From Octopus bimaculoides (Eukaryota), in contig NC_068981.1 of assembly GCF_001194135.2 (NCBI RefSeq), positions 56,761,855 to 56,824,461 of the forward strand: a stretch of DNA of 62,607 nucleotides, written 5' to 3'. A program made the translations under genes and the position numbers. The notes under the pieces are model-generated. The model saw only the letters and a program-made list of their open reading frames with translations. It was not told the DNA's origin and did no database searches. Below are positions 1-62,607 of the stretch, piece after piece (position 1 is the first letter of the stretch; every line of letters starts with the position of its first letter).

Positions 1-150
1 TCCTTGTTTTCTCCTTATTCTTTCTGTTGAAGAGCATAGCTCGAAACGTGAAAGACTTTCTCTATTCCCGAGCGTTAAACTAATACATCCTTTTGTTGTT
101 TACATTACCTGTCCTCGTCTGTTATTGTTTTTTTTCGTAAATTCTCCCAT
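1..150 (+). mobile_element. Penelope-like pseudo-LTR fragment, cut by the window edge
   Basis: Contains a minimal hammerhead-like motif at 19-55. Its downstream part (ccgagcg..aaactaatacat/acc..cctgtcctcgtc) recurs in decayed form near 20472-20530. Confidence 0.6.
19..55 (+). ncRNA. Minimal type I hammerhead-ribozyme-like motif (variant core CUGUUGA)
   Basis: tcttt CTGTTGA A gagc-ata-gctc GAAA CG T G aaaga. Stem I tcttt/aaaga, stem II gagc/gctc, palindromic ACGT stem III. Deviates from the canonical core at A6 (U) and at the cleavage base (G). Confidence 0.55.
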
Positions 151-177
151 ATATCTATATATATATATATACATGAC

Positions 178-335
178 GTGTTTCTTTCAATTTCCGTCTA
201 CCAAATCCACTCAGAAGGCTTTGGTTCACCCGAGGTTTTAGTAGAAGACACTTGCCCAATGTGCCAAACAGTGGGACTGAATGCTTCCCAACATGTAGTT
301 GGGAAACATCTTGGGAAGCAAGAATTTTAGCTGCC
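178..335 (-). mobile_element. SINE family B (tRNA-headed), left-arm fragment
   Basis: Reverse complement matches the left arm of the intact copy at 40313 (gtcccactg..ggcac.ttgggcaagtgtcttctacta..gagtggatttggtagacggaaa). Confidence 0.85.
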
Positions 336-17941: not shown

Positions 17942-19317
17942 TTGAGTTGTTCGGGAAGTCCGTGCCGATTTTTAAAGGAAAGAAAAAGGTCAATGAATAC
18001 TTGCCATTACATTTTTAATCAACCAAATATGAACCATTTTGTTGCACAATGCATCTCCATCTTTCCTTTAATTTGAAAATACCCTCTTCCCAGAATTGAG
18101 GTGGTTTCATGGCAAAGAATTCATCAAGGTATCTTTTTACGTCATCTAAGGAATTGAAATTTTTACCATTAAGACTATGCTGCAGAGACCTGAATAAGTG
18201 GAAATCCGAAGGAGCAATATCTGGTGAATATNNNNNNNNNNNNNNNNNNNNNNNNNNNNNNNNNNNNNNNNNNNNNNNNNNNNNNNNNNNNNNNNNNNNN
18301 NNNNNNNNNNNNNNNNNNNNNNNNNNNNNNNNNNNNNNNNNNNNNNNNNNNNNNNNNNNNNNNNNNNNNNNNNNNNNNNNNNNNNNNNNNNNNNNNNNNN
18401 NNNNNNNNNNNNNNNNNNNNNNNNNNNNNNNNNNNNNNNNNNNNNNNNNNNNNNNNNNNNNNNNNNNNNNNNNNNNNNNNNNNNNNAGTATTCCTCAGAC
18501 TTAATTGTCTGGTTACTTGGGAGAAGCTCATAGTACAGAATTCCTTTCCAATCCCACCAGACACAAAGCAAGACTTTTTTAGGATGAAGACCCGCTTTTG
18601 GAGTGGCTAAGGGTGACTCATGTCGCTTACTCCAGGATCGCTTTCTCTGAACATTTCGGTAGATAATCCATTTCTCATCACCTGTCACAATTTGCTTTAA
18701 AATAGGTGCGTTTTCATTCCGTTTATAAAGCGAATCACAGATGGAAATGCGATCCAAAAGTTCTTCTCACTCAACTCATGTGGTACCCAAACATCGTAGC
18801 GATTTGTGTGCCCAAGCTTTACCCAGGTGCTCATGAACGACGGATTTTAATGGGTGGAGGCTTTCTGCCAATTGTCAGGTTGTGCAATGTGAGTTATTCT
18901 CAATTAATGACTTGATTTGGCCATCATCTGTAGTGGATGGTCTGCCTGATCGCTCTTTATCAATAAGGCAACAATCTCCAGCTCGGAACCTTGCGAACCA
19001 CTTCCGTACAGTTCTTTCGGATAAAGAAACATCACTGTAAACTGCACATATTTCTTTGGTTGCTTGTGAGGCATTTTTCCCTTTACGGAAAAAGAAAAGC
19101 ATCAAGTGCCGAAAATGAACTTTCTTATCTTCCATTTTAAAGGGTTACAGAATTAACACAGGTTATAGGAACATAAACCTTCTTCCACGAAAAGATAGCT
19201 TAAACTGTGCTCTAAATGGAGGTGAAGTCAAATCCTATTCTATGGACTCAACCACGTTCTAAAATAAGTCGAAAGGTAAGCTACTATAAATCGGCATGAA
19301 CTTTCCGGACAACCCAA
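17942..19317 (-). mobile_element. Full-length mariner (mellifera-like), TA TSD, internal gap
   Basis: 30-bp TIRs ttgagttgttcgggaagtccgtgccgattt versus the reverse complement of aaatcggcatgaactttccggacaacccaa (5 mismatches). TA at 17940-17941 and 19318-19319. Confidence 0.93.
18015..19135 (-). pseudogene. Mariner transposase pseudogene
   Basis: MEDKKVHFRHLMLFFFRKGKNASQA..RSGRP..WVPHEL..QIVTGDEKW..KKVLLCVWWDWKGILYYELL..NGSYLVD*. Has a stop at 18875-18877 and a frameshift. Confidence 0.92.
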
Positions 19318-27411: not shown

Positions 27412-28826
27412 TTCAATTCTGCCTTAGCAACTGTGTCACTCCAGACGACTGGAAAATTGCCAGTGTCGTTCCCCTGTTCAAAAAAGGTGATCGCACATCA
27501 CCTGTCAACTACCGTCCAGTCAGTCTTACTAGCTGCATCGCCAAACTGATGGAATCGTGTCAGAGAAATAGTTTGGAACTTTTGGAGCTCTCACAGCCTT
27601 ATTCGACCCTCACAATTTGGTTTTATCCTTAACTCCAGCTGCTGTAGTCAACTCATCGAGTTTGTTGAGGACATCACCCGAGTTACTACTCATGGCGGCT
27701 CATGGGTGATGCTGTCTACCTTGATTTTTCCACACAAACGACTTATAGTAAAACTCTCTGCAATGGGTTTGAAGGATGATCTCTATAACTGGCTGAAGTG
27801 CTTCATTCTCGGTCGAAAAAAGGTAGTTACGGTTCTAGGACATCATTCTTCACTCTTTAGATAACTTCTGGTGTACCACAAGGATCCGTTCTTGGACCCC
27901 TACTGTTTGCTGCATATATTAATGATATACATCCCAACTTGAGGAATGTTACGGAGCTGAAATATGCAGATGATATCAAGCTGTACCTCGAAATAAAAAG
28001 AACAGATGCTATGCGCTCTCCTGCAATCAGACCTGGATACAATGCAGCAATGGATCTCTGATTGGCAGCTCAAGCTAGCTATGGACATGTGTGTCACCAG
28101 GATTTTGGAAGGAAAAATCCAGCCTTTACATAATCGCGCAGCAACACCAATCTCAAGAAGTCTTCTAGCGGACGTGATCTGGGCAATATTGTAAATCTGC
28201 GCTGGACAAACCACATCTCTAAGACCTTTGTCAGCCGCTCTCCAGCTATCTATTTAAAATTGTATACGACAATGGTACATCTACAATTGGAATTTGCATC
28301 ACTAGTCTGGAACCCCTATCTTGCTCAGCATATAAATCTCCTGGAAACTGTTCAGAAACGTGCAACCAAACGAATACCCGCCGTCAGACATCTGCTATAC
28401 TTTGAACGTCTTGCTATCCTAGGCATGGATACACTGAAGCTCAGACGTCTGGCAACTGACTTGGTAGACACCTACAAGATTATCCACCATCTTTCCAGCA
28501 ACAACCTTGGGCACCTTTTTGAATTGCATATGACAAACACTCACGGACATACTTATGAAATAAAAAAGCAACACAGCACCCATGACTTTCGGAAACATTT
28601 TTTCACGCTGAGATTTGCTGAAGCATGGATTAAACTATCCGTATCAGTTTTTAGCTGTCGAGACATCCTTCAAAAAGCTTCCATACTTCCTGAAATCTGC
28701 CAACAGTACACCTGAAGGCTTTTCTTTTCTTTTCTTTTTTTTATTTGTAGTACACCTGAGTACTGTATACAACAATTTCCTTAATTATGTATATCTAAAA
28801 ATTTTATTATTATATACCTGAAATAA
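27412..28826 (+). mobile_element. CR1-clade LINE, 5'-truncated RT pseudogene with 3' UTR
   Basis: PDDWKIASVVPLFKKGDRTSPVNYRPVSLTSCIAKLMES..DAVYLDFS..SGVPQGSVLGPLLF..YADDIKLY..LEFASLVWNPY..LETVQKRATK. Confidence 0.93.
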
Positions 28827-29500: not shown

Positions 29501-29750
29501 TAGGCGTGGTTGTGTGGTAAGAAGCTTGTTTCCCAACCACATGGTTCCGGGTCCACTTCTACTGCGTGGCACTTTGTGTAAGTGTCTTCTACTATAGCCT
29601 TGAGAATGGATTTGGTAGACGGAAACTGAAAAAAGCCCGTCGCATGCATGCATGCATGCATGCATGTACGTACGTATGTATGTATGTATGTATGTATGTA
29701 TGCATGTATGTATGTTCGTATGTATGTATGTATGTATAGATAGATAGATG

Positions 29751-29806
<56 letters not shown>

Positions 29807-30035
29807 TGTGTGTGTGTGTCTGTTGTATCTGTCTCCCCACCCCGCCATCGCTGGTCAACAGATCCTGATGTGTCTATGTCGCCGTAAGAGTAGCGGTTCG
29901 ACAACAGAGACTGACACTATAAGTACTAGGCTTACAAAGAAAACGTCCTGGGATCGATTTCTTCGCCTAAAACCCTTTAAAGAGGTGCTCCAGCATGACC
30001 GCAGCCAAATGACTGAAAAAGAATAAAAGAATAAA
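29501..30035 (+). mobile_element. SINE family B with expanded internal microsatellite
   Basis: Left arm ends aagcccgtcg, then (CATG)(CGTA)(TATG)(TAGA)(TG) tracts, then the right arm to gactgaaaaagaataaaag. Confidence 0.9.
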
Positions 30036-40312: not shown

Positions 40313-40491
40313 TAGGCGCAGGAGTGGCTGTGTGGTAAGTAGCTTTCTTACCAACCACATGGTTCCGGGTTCAGTCCCACTGCGTGGCACCTTGGGCAGG
40401 TGTCTTCTACTATAGCCACGGGCCGACCGAGGCCTTGTGAGTGGATTTGGTAGACGGAAACTGAAAGAAGCCCGTCGTATATATGTATATG

Positions 40492-40534
<43 letters not shown>

Positions 40535-40738
40535 ATGTCTGTGTTTATCCCCCCAACATCGCTTGACAACCGATGCTGGTGTGTTTACGTCCCCGTAACT
40601 TAGCGGTTCAGCAAAAGAGACCGATAGAATAAGTACTAGGCTTACAAAGAATAAGTCCTGGGGTCGATTTGTTCGACTAAAGGCGGTGCTCCAGCATGGC
40701 CGCAGTCAAATGACTGAAACAAGTAAAAGAGAGAAAAG
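40313..40738 (+). mobile_element. SINE family B, intact reference copy
   Basis: taggcgcaggagtggctgtgtggtaag (A box)..ggttcagtccc (B box)..internal (TA)(TG) tract..gactgaaacaagtaaaagag. Confidence 0.93.
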
Positions 40739-40770
40739 AGTATATACATATCTAAATACATTCACATATT

Positions 40771-40821: not shown

Positions 40822-40960
40822 ACTCACGTGGTAAGAAGTTTGCTTCCCAACCACATGGTTCTGCGTTCAGTCCCACTACACGGCAAGTGTCTCCTACTTT
40901 AGCCTCAGGCCGACCAAAGCTTTGTGTGTGGATTTGGTAGACGGAAACCGAAAGAAGTCT
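40822..40960 (+). mobile_element. SINE family B left-arm fragment
   Basis: gtggtaagaagtttgcttcccaaccacatggttc..gatttggtagacggaaac. Confidence 0.85.
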
Positions 40961-53807: not shown

Positions 53808-53891
<84 letters not shown>

Positions 53892-53955
53892 GTATGTGTG
53901 TGTGTGTGTGTCAACATGTGACTGTGTGTGAATGTATGTGTGTGCGCGCGCGCAG
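53775..53955. repeat. (TG)n microsatellite
   Basis: Read directly. Confidence 0.95.
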
Positions 53956-53974
53956 GCGACATGTATACGTCACA

Positions 53975-54430
53975 GGATTTCGAAAATTAGTGTTACTTAT
54001 CGGAAACTCGAGAAGTATGTCAGTCCGGATTGGAATATTACAAGAAACACATTTCCCTGTGTATGAGGCTTTTGTCCTTATGGCTCTACTATATAGGTGC
54101 GAAACGTGGACAACCTACGGGAATCGAATCAAACAGTTGGAGATGCTTCATCAGTATTTGTATGTAACGCATCCTAGGAAGTGGCTTTCAAGACGAAACT
54201 GCTGCCACATCGTTCGAAGGACATTTTTGGCAAGTGTGGATTAATTTGCAACTCCAGTGGAGGCCTGATCAGGATGGTACAATACATGAGGCCGCAACTC
54301 AACCGGTGATGCAAGGAAACAGGCAGTTAGAGTGTTACATTTGCGAGTTTGCAGAACAGAATCTGAGCTAAAGACCCACCTACATGCACATGGTCACGCA
54401 AGGTTCAATGAAGGGATGATACTCATCTGC
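53975..54430 (+). mobile_element. RTE (BovB-like) 3' fragment
   Basis: VYEAFVLMALLYRCETWTTYGNRIKQLEMLHQ and a terminal C..C...L.THLH.H finger. Confidence 0.75.
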
Positions 54431-56650: not shown

Positions 56651-58779
56651 CCAGGGCAGGCTTGAATTTATAAAGGTCTGTAAGAATAGCTGCTGAACAG
56701 AAACCTACATAATACCATTTCCCTCTTGCATATTTTCCATTTTTTTAAATATTTATTTAACCTTATTTGTTCGTTGGTTCTAAAGGTATTCAATGCACAT
56801 CGTTTAACGTTCCGATTTTCAGACTTTCCACGCTTGTTGATAGTTATCAATCCTCCAAACCAACAAAATATGTACTAGTAGTGTACTGGCATTGATTTCA
56901 GCGATTATACTTCAAAATATGTCATCTTCCATTCGAAAAAATCAATGTATTTATTTAATAACTGGTGTTTCAATTTCAACTTTTCAACTAAAGTTTCTCA
57001 TTAATTGCGTTCAATTAAATACAAATTACCGAATAAATTGTCCTGTAGTTACAATGTATTAAATACTTCCTATTAATCTACTTTCACTGGGAATAGTTTC
57101 TTTAAGAGCGTCTGAAACAAAAACGTATAATTAACTATTAAGTAACCTGCCATGCATGAGTTAGACTAATTGGTTGAGAAATTTGAACTATTATGATTTT
57201 TGTAAAACAATAAACCTTTTCGCTTTTAATGTTCTTTCAATGGCTTAGTTACTAAGCTAATTTGACCAACTGCTGTTTTTAGCTATTATTACAATTGCAA
57301 AACAGCTTCAAACCTATTTCTTGTGTTCGTTATTTGTTTAATGATATAATAATCATTTAACAGAAACAAAGTCGTCTGCCATGGCGAAAAAACAATATTT
57401 TTGAAATGAAGCTCGATAACTTCATTCACTTCACCTAGAGACAGAACATATGACGAATATAATTGCTGCAATCTCGGTCTTCTCATAAATGTCACTTAAA
57501 CGATTTTCTGATGATTTGAACTGTAAACAAAATATTAGATGTATGTGAATATTATGCCTAAAATAGAGTGGTTCTCACAACTATTTTCACTTATTGAAGG
57601 ATACAAACAATTGAATGTATATAATTCCTTATATGCACACACATTTCGAACTTCCATTTTTCACTTGTACCTATATGGATACTAAATGTATCATGTTTAA
57701 CCGAAGCTTAAGAAGAATAAAATTGTTATAAAACTGTCTAGCATGAGTACCATTTGCTATTACCGATGAAAATAACAAACAGTAAAAGACGCGGAGAAAC
57801 TCAAAAATAGAAAATATGGATAGAATTGAATTACCTCAGCCACAAGCACTGAAAGTGCGAATAGAAAGTACTTTTGAATTTATGATATTAAGTAATAAAA
57901 ATATAATCTAAAGAATTAATCTAGAGGGTTGCCTTGGAGTAGAAACTCGCAGAGTCTACAAGAAAATTTATTCAATAAGATTAACCATTAGATTCAACCT
58001 TCATATTAAATTAACGAAATTAATGTTCAGAAATAGCAACAAAACTTGAATAAAGAACTTTACCTGAATGGGGGAAAATTATGGATATTTTCAGAAGCAT
58101 AAATTAATAAAAGGAGATTCAAATATACTGTAGTTCTTATCTCTTACAGAAAATTACAAGAATTAATATTAGCAGTTATCCAAAATAGATCGATTTTAAA
58201 TTAATGTTTTATCATTTCATTGTGCAATTTCCGTTAATGTATTTTAATGTCTTACCTATGTAATTTGGGTGCAAAACTTAATTTGTGCCCTTATTAGTGT
58301 TCAATCTGTTGTAAACATTTGAGCCATTTTTCTGGGGGTTTTTGTTAGTGTATAACTTCTTCCCTTCCTTTCTGGATGAAAGAAAAAGTAAAGCACACAG
58401 ATAATGAGCGCTGACCTTTCCACTTGCAATAATCCATAAAATATATTACAATTTTATAACACACAATTAGTAAATAATAATCAACTGATGCATTTTCAAA
58501 TGTTTCAAAATACACTACTATTAATTACTTTCTGTGGAAACTTTATACTTTACAATCACCATGGATTTGCTTTATTTACATATGTTACTATAAAGAAGAG
58601 ACTAACCGATATTTCTTTACCAAAACCTGCACATTTTCCATTCAACTCACGTTCGGCATGAATAAGCAAAACCATAAATGAGGAAACAATGTAGCTAATA
58701 TTTCCTCGTTTCGAACGTTGATAACTTAGGCGCAGATGCGACAGTAGGCGCATCGTGACTATAGATGCAGACGAGAATG

Positions 58780-59115
58780 CATAGTAAGAAGATTGCTTCG
58801 CAATCACATGACTCACGGTTCAGTTCTATTGCGTGGTACCTTCGGCAAGTGTCTTCTAATACAGCTTCGGGCCGACCAAAACTTTGTCACTGGATATAGT
58901 GGACAAAAACTGAAAGTGCGTCACATATGTATGTGTGCGCACGCATGCATGCTTGTGTGTGTGCGTGTTTCCCACCACTTGACAGCCGGTGCTAGTGTGT
59001 TTCAGTCCCCGTAATGTAAAAATTAGTACTGGGATCGATTCGCTCGCCTAAAATTCTTCAAGGCATTACCCCTGCATGGTCGAAGTCCACTGACTGAAAC
59101 AAGTAAAAGAAAAAT
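58780..59115 (+). mobile_element. SINE family B, decayed
   Basis: cacatgactcacggttcagttc..ggcaagtgtcttcta..gactgaaacaagtaaaag. Confidence 0.85.
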
Positions 59116-59520
59116 GATAAAAGAAAATCTTAAATAATTTCTTATAGGATTTCAGTTTATGAAACTCTGATCCCTATGCAAGCAACGGTTGAATATTTCT
59201 GAAAATATGGATACTATACGGAATAATGGGAGAGAACAAAAGAAAATTCTTGTAGCCTATTTGTACTATGAATCGCTCTACAATATAATTCAGAGCTGCC
59301 TAAATTCCTATGATGTTAGTTTGTGAGCTGAAGGATCGACCGTGCCACACTTTTAGTTACCATATTTTTTTAATACAACATAAACTTAGACCAGCTCCCA
59401 AAAAGTTTTCATAATATTAGATATAACATACTCACATACAAGACCTTTCTGCACCCATATATACACACACACGTTAGTCTACATGGAGCGAAATACATTG
59501 AGTGTTTCGAAAATTATATA

Positions 59521-59549
59521 TAGGCGCAGGAGTAGCTGTGTGGTAAGTA
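59521..59549 (+). mobile_element. SINE family B 5' stub (interrupted)
   Basis: taggcgcaggagtagctgtgtggtaagta equals the first 29 nt of the intact copy at 40313 (1 mismatch). Confidence 0.9.
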
Positions 59550-61729
59550 CCTCTCTTCCATCACTATTGTGTGGACGTGATTTTTTTCGCTGCTGCAGTC
59601 ACGTCGCTGTATACCAACATCGTGAATTATTGAAACACAACTACAAGGTAAGGCATTTGTTTTTTGGGATTCAGTGGGGGTTTGTTGCTCGTGTTTATGT
59701 ATTTTTGTCGAACAATAAATCTCCACTGAGTTCCACGCATTTGTCTGCCTGTAGTTGTGCTTAAAGTCTCACTCAGCAGTGAGAAGTGTGTTTTGGAGAC
59801 GAATGACCTCCTCCAAAAATTGTGAACTTTGTTTTTGTGTTCCTGTTGCTGTGTTCCTGCTACTATTTTGTTGGCCTGGAGTAATGGTGGCCAGAAGATT
59901 GTATGCAATATTTTAATTGTGGAATTTTTTAACCAATTTTTGTTCAATTTATTGGTGAAATTTGTGAAGCTTTATTCTGGTTGCTGTGTTCCTGTTGCTA
60001 TACCAGTTGACCGGAAGATTGAAGTTGCTGTGTTTCGGACTGTTTTCTTTCCTTCTTCCTTCATTGCCTTTTTTTCTATTTGGACTTTTTTGTGCTAACT
60101 CTTCTTCCAAAACATGGCAGAAAAAGCGAACACTGTGTTGGAGTGGGAGATTGTCCCACCCAAAGAGTGGATGAAAGACTTGGAAAAAAGAACGGTGATG
60201 TTGAGGACCTATTCTAGGTCGCTCGGCACCATTGTGCAATTCAATAAAGACACTATTGAAAAACAGTTGGCAGACTACCTGCCAACTGTGAAGTTTTTTC
60301 TCGGGGTCCNNNNNNNNNNNNNNNNNNNNNNNNNNNNNNNNNNNNNNNNNNNNNNNNNNNNNNNNNNNNNNNNNNNNNNNNNNNNNNNNNNNNNNNNNNN
60401 NNNNNNNNNNNNNNNNNNNNNNNNNNGGAGGAAAATAATAAGAGCCTGGGTGTGCGGGCTGCCCCCGAGCATGGAGGCAGGATGGATTGTGAATACCATC
60501 CGGCGAGGCTTGGGGGATAGCGACCCCAGGCTGCTTAATGTGACTGTGGCTCCCGCGGTTAACTGGGAAGGGTCAAATGCAACTTTGACCCTGTGGACCC
60601 CAGTGGCCGCGGAGAAAATGACTTTCCCAGACTTTCTGACAATGGCAGGTTCCAGGTATCCGGTGATCCTTGAGGGTCGCCCCCCCCCCCAAGTGTCACT
60701 CGTGCCTGGAGTCAGGCCATATCAGGAAGAACTGCCCCCAGAGCCGTGGTAAGGCTCTGGAGCAGGAAAAGAGTAAGCTGCCCTCCGCTCTCCCATTGCA
60801 GGGAGGGATGGAGGAAGTCGAGGAGGATAGTGCCTCCACGAAAAGGAAGAGAAAGGTGAGCAGCAACAGTTGCTCACCAAAGAAAGTACAGGAGGCACAG
60901 TCAGCGGAGGAGGATGGCGACCCTCCGTGTCCGCCGACGCTACCTCCTGAAGAATTGAAAAGAAAAGGAGAAAAAAGAGGAGGAGAAGAATGTCGGAGGA
61001 TGTTCCTGGGCCGCCGACAGAAGCACCGGTGGAATGTGTGCCACCGGTGGATGAAGCTCCGTTAGTGGTAAGTGTGCCACTGGCAGAGCAGTCTGAGGTC
61101 CCTTCACGTGAGGAGGAGGGGGAGCTTCTCCTCCTCTTCCACGAGGGGGGGGCCATAGACCGATTTTTGGACGGTTTGTGCGGCCGGGACTGTATGTATT
61201 CGGCTTGCACAGACAGCCCAATGTGGCCTCCGCAGGTGACTGCGGAGGTCATAACAACAAAAATCTTGTCAAACGTTGTGGCGACCTTTGACCAAGTAGA
61301 ATACGTCTCTCTCTCCATATGTCATCTCCTGTCAATGCAGTGTTTTCTGCAGGCGGCAGGACAATTAGTCTGGACGAAGCTAATAATACCTGTGTATTCG
61401 AGGATTTTGAGACACGTTTACTGGGCTAACCATTGGGGGATTTCCTGCAGACAGCAGGGAACTTGCTTGGGGGCCCGGACGAGGAAGATTAACAAGAAAA
61501 AACGTTGTAATTGTTAAATTTGAAAATGTTGAAATGTTATATAATATTATATATTGTAAATTGTATTTTGTAAATTGAACAATGTTTTCGAGGGGTTATC
61601 GGTCGGCGGTCGTCGGTGCCCCTCCCATTTTTTCCATCATTTTAATTTTCATTCATTCATTGATGTAATTGTCCAGCCCGCAGCTACTCCTCTTTGTAAG
61701 ACCGGTTAGATGGTCAATCAGATGAAATA
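59550..61729 (+). mobile_element. ORF1-only non-LTR retroelement (Tx1/L1-like, HAL1-type organisation)
   Basis: About 560-bp 5' UTR with a hairpin and gttgctgtgttcc repeats, a single gag-like ORF, a 240-bp 3' UTR, and a 5-bp TSD aagta (59545-59549, 61730-61734). Confidence 0.75.
60114..61492 (+). pseudogene. ORF1p-like protein: RRM-like segment, CX2CX4HX4C knuckle, basic NLS-like run, acidic C-terminus; three apparent frameshifts and one stop
   Basis: RAWVCGLPPSMEAGWIVNTIRRGLG; YPVILEGRPP/KCHSCLESGHIRKNCP across the C11 run at 60680-60690; KKRRKKRRRR; ends GGPDEED* at 61490-61492 after a shift in the ctctct tract. Confidence 0.75.
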
Positions 61730-61748
61730 AAGTAGCTCGCTTACCAAG

Positions 61749-62213
61749 TTTGTCTTGGCAGTCTACTTCCGGTTACCAATGAAGATAGACGTGTAGCTCA
61801 TAGCTCCGTCTAAGGAACAGAGGACACCGTCAGGGTGAGCGAATTTGCTTTTTTTTTGTGAGCTGGGTATTGATGGATATATCGATGAATAGGAGGTAAA
61901 AAAAAGCCTCGTTACGAGGGTTTGAAACTGCATCTTATAGCATCATTTGTACTGGTTTAAAATCTTAATTGTGCTTCTTTTCGTTTTTTTATGTTAAGTA
62001 AGTGGTTTTAGTGCCTCCTTTTTGTAAGATGTTTGAAACCTCATATTGATGTTTTAAAAAGGAAAATATGATTTCGAGAAAAACCCAATCGGCGGGCGTT
62101 GGGATTCCTCTCTCATTTATTCATCTTATGTCATTTCATTTTCATTCATTAATGTGTTGTCCAGCCCGCAACTACTCTATGTACTGCCTTTATGGCAAAT
62201 AAAATGAGATAAT
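61749..62213 (+). mobile_element. 465-bp non-coding relative of the preceding element, 17-bp TSD
   Basis: Flanked by gtagctcgcttaccaag (61732-61748) and gtagcttacttaccaag (62214-62230). The 3' 140 bp align with 61585-61730. Confidence 0.8.
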
Positions 62214-62585
62214 GTAGCTTACTTACCAAGCGCATGGTTCTGGGTTCAGTCTTACTGAATGGCATCTTGGACAAGTGTTTTCTGCTATAGCTACGGGCCG
62301 AACAAAGCCTTGTGAGTGGATTTGGTAGATGGAAATTGAAAGAAACCCGACGTATATATATATGAATATGCATATGTTTGTGTCTGTTTATCCTCCATCA
62401 TCACTTGACACCCGATGTTGGTGTGTTTACGTCCTCGTAACTTAGCGGTTCGGCAAAAGAGACCGATAGAATAAGTACTAGGCTTAGAACGAATAAATTC
62501 TGGTATCGATTCGCTCAACTAAAGGCGGTGCTCCAGCATGGCCGCAATCAAATGACTGAAACCAGTAACAATAAAAGAATATAAC
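62214..62585 (+). mobile_element. SINE family B, remainder of the interrupted copy
   Basis: Resumes exactly where the stub at 59549 stops (gtagctt.cttaccaa..catggttc.gggttcagtc) and runs to gactgaaaccagtaa. Confidence 0.92.
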
Positions 62586-62607
62586 TTTCCATTCTTCACT
62601 ATATATA

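What the first reader, a model, noticed from the sequence alone, without database searches (positions are those of the whole stretch)
61590..62110. Shared 3' stem-loop with conserved loop and replaced stem
Seen: long element gaggggttatcgg[tcggcggtcg]tcggtgcccctc (61590-61624) and short element gagaaaaacccaa[tcggcgggcg]ttgggattcctc (62076-62110). The 10-nt loop differs at one base while the inner stems differ almost entirely yet still pair. Downstream both share cattcatt..atgt..ttgtccagcccgca.ctactc..atga.ataa. Known: stringent LINE RTs recognise a 3' stem-loop. Inference: this is the cis signal for the missing autonomous partner.
Basis: partly seen in the sequence, partly recalled or inferred. 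Interest (0 to 1): 0.75.

Follow-up and report, generated by a model that had tools for sequence, protein, structure and literature searches.

The report
Hairpin shared by two retroelement tails
Two neighbouring retroelement copies without a reverse transcriptase, in an octopus-type genome, end in the same ~190-base tail; it holds a small RNA hairpin whose loop is kept while its stem letters differ yet still pair, which fits a recognition tag for a helper LINE enzyme but cannot be proven from two copies.

Summary
The 35-nt segments 61590-61624 and 62076-62110 align without gaps and fold into the same hairpin. The 10-nt loop block is 9/10 identical. The stem arms are only 5/19 identical, yet 12 of 14 in-register pairs survive, four through changes on both sides.

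With two copies this is suggestive, not proof (p about 0.01-0.09 depending on the null). No further copy could be found in the 145 kb of octopus DNA I could reach.

The context is new. Both elements sit at one position in the tRNA-like head of a single copy of an abundant SINE, and an 18-nt SINE piece is present three times. That is the signature of two successive target-primed insertions at one site.

The long element encodes a LINE-type ORF1 protein (two RRM domains plus a CCHC knuckle) and no reverse transcriptase. Its two Octopus sinensis relatives also start at the same SINE head position.

The hairpin lies about 100 nt inside the 3' end, in a ~190-nt shared tail. The best reading is a cis-acting 3' tail of helper-dependent, probably site-specific, non-LTR elements. 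No partner LINE was identified. This is a new member of a known kind, of moderate interest.

The parts
59521..59560 (+). 5' part of the interrupted SINE copy. This is the tRNA-like head, positions 1-41 of the SINE, numbered from window 40313. Its last 16 nt (59545-59560, AAGTACCTCTCTTCCA) are the first copy (T1) of the triplicated target piece.
   Evidence: Local alignment to the full SINE copy 40313-40740.
59561..61729 (+). Long element, about 2.17 kb including an N gap at 60310-60426. It consists of a 5' leader, ORF1, ORF B and the 3' module. It has no RT or endonuclease.
   Evidence: Bounded by T1 and T2. Homologous to two O. sinensis loci from the SINE-head junction to window ~61255.
60114..60990 (+). 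ORF1-like gene: two RRM-like domains plus one CCHC knuckle (the LINE 'type I ORF1' architecture). It is broken here by the N gap and by a frameshift at the C-run 60681-60690.
   Evidence: 51% identical to Octopus sinensis LOC115225585. Weak zf-CCHC matches. AlphaFold2 model with pLDDT 81.8. Foldseek matches to tandem-RRM proteins such as SFPQ/NONO and hnRNP A1 UP1. Architecture definition from PMC4120745.
60990..61517 (+). ORF B, 175 aa, with no recognisable domain. Only its first half is conserved in the O. sinensis copies.
61540..61729 (+). Shared 3' module, long copy.
   Evidence: Alignment A1, blastn, covariance model R1 hit at 61578-61692 with 135 bits.
61590..61624 (+). Hairpin, long copy (-17.8 kcal/mol). 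Three G-U pairs make it a + strand (sense RNA) structure.
61730..61748 (+). T2, the second copy of the SINE target piece (AAGTAGCTCGCTTACCAAG, SINE positions 25-43). It stands alone between the two elements.
   Evidence: 17/18 identity to the SINE. All other such matches lie inside SINE copies. No other SINE-like sequence in 61748-62075.
61749..62211 (+). Short element, about 463 nt. Its 5' ~277 nt are unique in all DNA held. Its 3' part is the shared module.
62026..62211 (+). Shared 3' module, short copy.
   Evidence: R1 hit at 62064-62180 with 139 bits.
62076..62110 (+). Hairpin, short copy (-8.4 kcal/mol).
62212..62590 (+). T3 (62212-62230) running straight into the rest of the same SINE (positions 25 to the end).
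   Evidence: About 81% identity over 388 nt to the SINE copy at 40313.

Best explanation
The region is one copy of an abundant tRNA-derived octopus SINE, hit twice at the same nucleotide position of its head by two different helper-dependent non-LTR retroelements.

The layout is: SINE[1-41] | long element | SINE[25-43] | short element | SINE[25-end].

The two elements share only their last ~190 nt. That tail is the cis-acting part a trans-acting LINE machinery needs to start target-primed reverse transcription. The hairpin, which starts 72 nt after the ORF B stop codon and ends about 100 nt before the 3' end, is the best candidate for the protein-recognition tag within the tail: the stem is read as a shape and the G-rich loop as a sequence.

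Shown: the sequences, the common fold, the compensated stem differences, the triplicated target piece, the absence of RT, and the ORF1-type protein.

For: 1. The hairpins are in register and have the same topology: 12/14 pairs kept, 4 by double changes.
2. The arms are 26% identical against 70% for the rest of the module, and the loop block is 90% identical. The masters therefore differed in stem letters but not in pairing or loop.
3. G-U pairs in the long copy favour the sense RNA strand: -17.8 kcal/mol against -10.0 on the opposite strand.
4. Homology between the two elements is confined to the 3' ~190 nt. The 5' parts are unrelated. This is the pattern of retroposons that share a LINE-type tail.
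5. Both 3' ends abut the same SINE nucleotide, and an 18-nt SINE piece occurs three times. This is a TPRT-type target duplication made twice at one site.
6. Two O. sinensis relatives of the long element at unrelated loci begin at the same SINE head position.
7. The long element encodes a type I LINE ORF1-like protein (RRM-RRM-CCHC) and no ORF2.
8. There is precedent for bipartite stem/loop recognition by stringent LINE ORF2 (PMC4176376, PMC1636434).
9. There is precedent for a LINE and its non-autonomous partner both homing to another transposon (PMC4494074).
Against: - There are only two copies. Every covariation statistic is weak (p 0.008-0.09).
- The short hairpin is no more stable than shuffled sequence.
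- No partner LINE and no third copy were found in 145 kb of octopus DNA.
- The two O. sinensis long-family copies lack the module, and their homology to the window copy ends at window ~61255. The module may therefore not be an original part of the long family.
- The hairpin is internal to the tail, not terminal.
- There is no terminal short repeat of the kind seen in L2-type tails.
- Outside the arms the ~70-80% identity is about what neutral decay of two copies from similar masters would give, so the conservation of the rest of the module is not itself evidence of selection.
Confidence: 0.45

Rival explanations
1. The hairpin is a packaging or chaperone site for the element's own ORF1 protein rather than for a reverse transcriptase. 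CCHC knuckles and RRMs bind exposed G-rich loops. The short element would parasitise that protein as well as a helper RT.
For: The long element encodes RRM-RRM-CCHC. The loop is G-rich (GCGGU/GCGGG) and is the most conserved part. ORF1 CCHC/RRM domains are thought to bind and chaperone the transcript (PMC4120745).
Against: There is no binding data. The O. sinensis copies that encode the same protein family lack the hairpin.
Confidence: 0.15
2. The hairpin has no function. It is an inverted repeat whose two versions differ by chance, or by a one-step mutational process (intrastrand template switching or a small replacement copied from one arm to the other) that restores pairing without selection.
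For: Two sequences only. Conservative permutations give p up to 0.09. The shuffle control gives 36/500. The short hairpin's stability equals that of shuffles. The feature was picked post hoc from 62 kb. The inner stem of the short copy is a perfect palindrome, as template switching would make.
Against: Loop block 9/10 identical while the arms are 5/19. Both helices are compensated in register. A single helix with at least 4 double changes arises in 0.75% of column shuffles. The hairpin is located in the only part the two elements share.
Confidence: 0.22
3. The module is not a 3' tail. 'Element + rest of SINE' is one composite unit, a SINE carrying an insert, copied through the SINE's own 3' tail by the SINE's partner LINE. 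The hairpin is then just internal cargo. The shared SINE-head junction in O. sinensis reflects descent from one such composite, not site-specific integration.
For: All three long-family copies carry the same SINE head at their 5' end. The short element runs straight into a complete SINE remainder.
Against: The isolated 18-nt SINE piece between the two elements needs two insertions at one site. No SINE remainder follows the O. sinensis copies. It does not explain why two unrelated inserts share only the ~190 nt next to the junction.
Confidence: 0.12
4. The conserved block encodes a small peptide. An ATG at the same aligned position opens a 28-aa ORF (61582-61668) and a 44-aa ORF (62068-62202) in the same frame across the hairpin.
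For: Same start position and frame. The 3-nt indel is in frame.
Against: All stem differences change the amino acid. The stop position differs. Peptide identity is below nucleotide identity (my reading).
Confidence: 0.02

Closest known systems
Stringent-type LINE/SINE shared 3' tails of the L2 clade (eel UnaL2/UnaSINE1, zebrafish ZfL2-1/-2)
   Same: A tail shared by otherwise unrelated retroposons. It contains a hairpin with a bulge or internal irregularity. The stem is read generally and the loop specifically (PMC4176376, PMC1636434).
   Different: Here no LINE carries the tail. The hairpin is ~100 nt from the 3' end rather than in the last ~60 nt. There is no terminal short tandem repeat. 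There is no sequence similarity and no Rfam match.
Target-specific LINEs and their non-autonomous partners that home to another transposon (Tx1-Mar and SINEU in Mariner-N4_AMi; Tx1L in Tx1D)
   Same: Repeated insertion at one position of a dispersed repeat. A non-autonomous element shows the same target as its presumed helper (PMC4494074).
   Different: The target here is the tRNA-like head of a SINE. The helper is unknown. Specificity rests on two 3' junctions at one locus plus three 5' junctions.
HAL1 ('half-L1'), ORF1-only LINE derivatives of mammals (mentioned in PMC5753468; details from my own knowledge)
   Same: Encodes an ORF1 protein but no ORF2, so it must borrow the RT/endonuclease.
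   Different: The ORF1 here is type I (RRM-RRM-CCHC), not the coiled-coil/RRM/CTD type. There is no poly(A) tail. Descent from a full LINE is not shown.
3' UTR recognition in site-specific LINEs (R2, SART1)
   Same: A structured 3' UTR of a few hundred nt, with internal stem-loops needed for recognition rather than a terminal hairpin (PMC10499050 for R2; SART1 from my own knowledge).
   Different: No homology. The clade is unknown. The ~18-bp target duplication differs from typical R2 junctions.
tRNA-derived SINEs of octopus (OR/OK families, Ohshima and Okada 1994; from my own knowledge)
   Same: The interrupted host repeat is a tRNA-headed SINE of ~430 nt with a central microsatellite. It is present at least 6 times in the window.
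   Different: It is the target, not the feature. Its 3' tail is unrelated to the module.

Membership tests
Stringent LINE/SINE 3'-tail stem-loop (L2-type) | Tail shared between an autonomous LINE and a non-autonomous element | tested here: not met
   The tail is shared by two RT-less elements. No LINE with this tail was found in the window, L001, L002 or L004.
Stringent LINE/SINE 3'-tail stem-loop (L2-type) | Hairpin conserved in shape with a conserved loop | tested here: met
   12/14 pairs kept, 4 compensated, loop block 9/10 identical. Only n = 2.
Stringent LINE/SINE 3'-tail stem-loop (L2-type) | Hairpin within the last ~60 nt, followed by short terminal repeats | tested here: not met
   The hairpin ends 105 nt (long) and 101 nt (short) before the 3' junction. 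The ends are ...ATGA(A/G)ATAA with no tandem repeat.
Stringent LINE/SINE 3'-tail stem-loop (L2-type) | Bound by the cognate ORF2 and required for retrotransposition | not testable with these tools
   Needs binding and retrotransposition assays.
Site-specific non-LTR retroelements | Independent copies at the same nucleotide of a repeated target | tested here: inconclusive
   Two 3' junctions at SINE position 25 at one locus. Three 5' junctions at SINE position ~37-41 at three loci. The O. sinensis copies could also be descendants of one composite.
Site-specific non-LTR retroelements | Target-site duplication flanking the insert | tested here: met
   T1 59545-59560, T2 61730-61748, T3 62212-62230.
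Site-specific non-LTR retroelements | Encodes RT and endonuclease | tested here: not met
   Only ORF1 and ORF B are present, and Pfam finds no RT or endonuclease. The elements would therefore be non-autonomous.
LINE type I ORF1 protein | At least one RRM immediately upstream of a CCHC knuckle (PMC4120745) | tested here: met
   AlphaFold2 model with two RRM-like domains. CCHC at KCHSCLESGHIRKNC with a weak Pfam match. 47 distant relatives share the same layout.
LINE type I ORF1 protein | Located upstream of an ORF2 in a LINE | tested here: not met
   No ORF2 in the window copy or at L001, L002 or L004.
Any Rfam family | Match to a curated covariance model | tested here: not met
   No match over the hairpins or module at E <= 10 in 58500-62607.

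The most novel reading that the evidence does not exclude
These are members of an undescribed lineage of non-LTR retroelements that home to one position in the tRNA-like head of the most abundant octopus SINE. The lineage would include an ORF1-only 'half-LINE' and a ~460-nt tail-sharing parasite. The UCGGCGGNCG hairpin would be its lineage-specific recognition tag. A SINE would then serve as a safe-harbour target for another retroelement family.
Probability: 0.3. Interest if true: 0.55.

Novelty: new member of a known kind. Interest (0 to 1): 0.35.

Why it matters
If real, the hairpin is a handle for finding the LINE that drives this family in cephalopod genomes, where few full-length LINEs have been assembled (PMC9115989). 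It would also give a clean test case for how a retroelement tail is recognised: loop as sequence, stem as shape. The insertion anatomy suggests a SINE head used as a homing site, which would add a new target class to the known site-specific retroelements. On present evidence it remains an ordinary-looking example of tail sharing among retroposons, supported by two copies.

Tried and rejected
- **More copies in the window.** blastn with word size 7, motif searches and covariance model R1 over the window plus three octopus loci, 145 kb in all, found only the two known copies.
- **More copies elsewhere.**
  - A search with a 74-aa ORF spanning the module/SINE junction found nothing, so the protein collection holds no six-frame octopus ORFs.
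  - Two further protein searches found only Octopus sinensis LOC115225585.
  - The metagenome scan for TTGTCCAGCCCGCANCTACTC gave one contig (L003) whose flanks are unrelated. This is a chance match.
- **Module related to the SINE's own 3' tail.** No: local alignment is no better than shuffles.
- **SINE body continuing after T2, or a hidden SINE head before the short module.** Not significant beyond the 18-nt piece. My visual matches there were chance.
- **Tandem duplication of [ORF end + module].** Rejected, because the ~280 nt upstream of the two modules are unrelated.
- **tRNA genes or known RNA families at the site.** None.
- **Distant ORF1 relatives as a route to a partner LINE.** P0008 is a stand-alone O. 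vulgaris gene with no ORF2, no SINE head and no module. P0003 is not on record.
Full report
**1. What is there**

The window is cephalopod-type genomic DNA: about 35% G+C, many N gaps and microsatellites. It carries several copies of a ~430-nt tRNA-headed SINE, whose full copy lies at 40313-40740. The only close protein relative of anything in the region is an Octopus sinensis protein.

The loop motif TCGGCGGNCG and the downstream block TTGTCCAGCCCGCA each occur exactly only at these two places in the window.

The two copies align over about 190-205 nt, 61540-61748 against 62026-62230. blastn gives 72.7% identity over the best 150 nt.

**2. The hairpin**

Folded separately, both segments adopt the same shape:
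- an outer GAG/CTC helix;
- an inner 5-bp helix, AUCGG/UCGGU against CCCAA/UUGGG;
- a bulged U and two closing C-G/G-C pairs;
- a 5-nt loop, GCGGU against GCGGG.

RNAalifold on the 225-column alignment recovers this hairpin with 12 shared pairs. Four are changed on both sides and two on one side. Counting all 14 in-register pairs, 92.9% of cells pair, against 39-50% when the 3' partner is slid by 1-3 columns.

The variable parts of the arms are 5/19 identical. The 10-nt loop block is 9/10 identical and the rest of the module is 106/151 (Fisher p = 4.5e-4). The arms are therefore more different than neutral decay of the neighbouring sequence would make them, yet they still pair.

Three G-U pairs in the long copy make the fold better on the + strand, -17.8 against -10.0 kcal/mol. 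This is the sense strand of the element's ORFs.

**3. How much more than chance**

Two sequences set a low ceiling on significance.
- Column shuffles of the 118-column core alignment reach the observed alifold energy in 3% of cases. They reach four double changes somewhere in the structure in 16%.
- A single helix with at least 4 double changes arises in 0.75% of shuffles, and with at least 12 pairs as well in 0.05%.
- The more conservative test permutes columns only within one arm, which keeps the clustering and composition of the variable columns. It gives 0.8-3% for energy and 2-9% for at least 4 double changes.
- The shuffle control of the count of structure pairs gives 36/500, close to its floor for two sequences.
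- The short hairpin alone is no more stable than shuffled sequence.

I read this as suggestive, not established, especially since the feature was picked by eye from 62 kb.

**4. The surroundings change the picture**

In what follows, SINE positions are numbered from window 40313.
- The long element is preceded by positions 1-41 of the SINE, at 59521-59560.
- It is followed by an isolated 18-19-nt piece of the same SINE, positions 25-43, at 61730-61748.
- The short element follows directly. It is in turn followed by positions 25 to the end of the SINE (62212 to about 62590), at about 81% identity over 388 nt.

The layout is therefore: SINE[1-41] | long | SINE[25-43] | short | SINE[25-end]. The piece AAGTAGCT..CTTACCA(AG) is present three times.

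Every other match to that 18-mer in the DNA held lies inside an ordinary SINE copy. No further SINE-like sequence lies between the two modules.

The simplest history is two successive insertions into the same site of one SINE copy, each duplicating about 18 bp of target. Both inserted units end in the shared module (...ATGA[A/G]ATAA), and they share nothing else. A tandem duplication is excluded because the ~280 nt upstream of the two modules are unrelated.

A precise common 3' junction, an ~18-bp duplication, no terminal inverted or long terminal repeats and no poly(A) tail together fit target-primed reverse transcription by a LINE-type machinery with a strong site preference. This is inference from established LINE biology.

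**5. What the long element is**

It carries an ORF whose product is 51% identical to Octopus sinensis LOC115225585. In the window the ORF is broken by the N gap 60310-60426 and by a frameshift in a C10 run at 60681-60690. Both could be assembly problems.

An AlphaFold2 model of the O. sinensis protein, built on 42 sequences, is confident (mean pLDDT 81.8; above 85 for residues ~10-200). It shows two RRM-like domains. Its best PDB matches are tandem-RRM proteins: SFPQ/NONO/PSPC1 and hnRNP A1 UP1. A CCHC knuckle follows, with only weak Pfam matches.

RRM(s) immediately upstream of a CCHC knuckle is the 'type I' LINE ORF1 architecture, known from the I, Jockey, R1, Tad1, plant L1 and L2 clades (PMC4120745).

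A full HMMER scan of 1.84 billion representatives found 47 distant relatives of 85-801 aa, none with an RT. One of them is a stand-alone O. vulgaris gene with no ORF2 behind it.

A second ORF, ORF B (60990-61517), has no recognisable domain. There is no RT or endonuclease. The long element is thus an ORF1-only unit of LINE ancestry.

**6. Relatives in Octopus sinensis**

Two loci carry long-family copies: L001 and L002.
- Both start with the same SINE head, positions 1-37/40, followed by homologous leader sequence.
- Their flanks are unrelated to the window.
- Neither has the module, the loop motif, or a downstream SINE piece.
- L001 breaks off in a microsatellite early in ORF B. Homology between L002 and the window ends at window ~61255.

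The shared head junction fits site-specific insertion. It also fits descent from one 'SINE-with-insert' composite. The module cannot be shown to be an original part of the long family.

**7. Mechanism**

The best-supported reading is that the ~190-nt module is the cis-acting 3' tail that lets RT-less elements use a helper LINE. The hairpin would be the recognised tag within it.

This matches the experimentally defined logic of stringent LINEs. The ORF2 region between the endonuclease and RT binds the tail stem-loop, with the stem read in general and the loop specifically (PMC4176376). Irregularities in the stem matter as well (PMC1636434).

It differs in that the hairpin is 101-105 nt from the 3' end, and the end carries no short tandem repeats. 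That is more like the longer structured 3' UTRs of site-specific elements. A LINE and its non-autonomous partner both homing to another transposon has precedent in Tx1-Mar and SINEU (PMC4494074).

An equally mechanistic alternative is that the G-rich loop is read by the RRM-RRM-CCHC ORF1 protein. The null alternative is a palindrome altered by chance or by template switching.

**8. What could not be done**

None of the DNA collections at hand holds cephalopod genomes.
- A junction-spanning ORF found nothing.
- Two more protein searches found only the same O. sinensis protein.
- The one metagenome hit to the 21-nt block is a chance match with unrelated flanks.

The same holds for the search for a partner LINE.

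**9. Verdict**

- Novelty: a new member of a known kind. The possible homing to a SINE head is the more original aspect.
- Interest: 0.35.

Noticed in passing
window 61582-61668 and 62068-62202: An ATG at the same aligned position opens a small ORF (28 and 44 aa) in the same frame across both hairpins (MFSRGYRSAVVGAPP... / MISRKTQSAGVGIPL...). The stem differences are all amino-acid changing, so coding constraint looks unlikely.
   Followed up: partly
window 60310-60426 and 60681-60690: ORF1 of the long element is interrupted only by an assembly gap and by a frameshift inside a run of ten C. The gene may be intact in the real genome.
   Followed up: no
L002 10001-36638 (Octopus sinensis CM016865.1): The annotated 376-aa protein P0015 joins the first ~45 residues of a long-family ORF1 (a pseudogene with stop codons at L002 16438-17040) to an rve integrase fragment. 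It looks like a chimeric gene model built from two transposon remnants.
   Followed up: partly
window 59521-59560; L001 9451-9487; L002 15702-15741: All three long-family copies carry the SINE head, which contains GGTAAGT, a strong 5' splice-site-like motif. A second AAGGTAAG lies ~100 nt further on. The O. sinensis gene model spans more than 17 kb, so the head may serve as exon or promoter sequence.
   Followed up: no
window 61087-61163; inverted repeat arms 60975-60988 / 61125-61138: There is a weak mir-627-like Rfam match (26.8 bits, gathering score 86, E = 0.007). A perfect 14-nt purine/pyrimidine inverted repeat lies inside and around the start of ORF B. Probably chance in low-complexity GA-rich sequence.
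   Followed up: no
L003 4503-4523 (metagenome contig Ga0123355_10085741): The 21-nt block TTGTCCAGCCCGCAGCTACTC occurs once in a eukaryote-like metagenome contig. The flanks show no similarity to the module, so this is about what chance predicts for the size of the collection.
   Followed up: yes
window 18146-18757 (-), 28260-28715 (+), 53810-54244 (+): Fragments of other mobile elements: a mariner-type transposase interrupted by an N gap, and two LINE reverse-transcriptase C-terminal fragments. None has the module downstream.
   Followed up: partly
window 40313-40740, 29502-30030, 40828-40957, 58784-59110, 149-281 (-): These are further copies of the same tRNA-headed SINE. Each full copy has a central TA/TG microsatellite and sits in TA-rich target sequence. 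Many of the assembly gaps fall in such microsatellites.
   Followed up: partly
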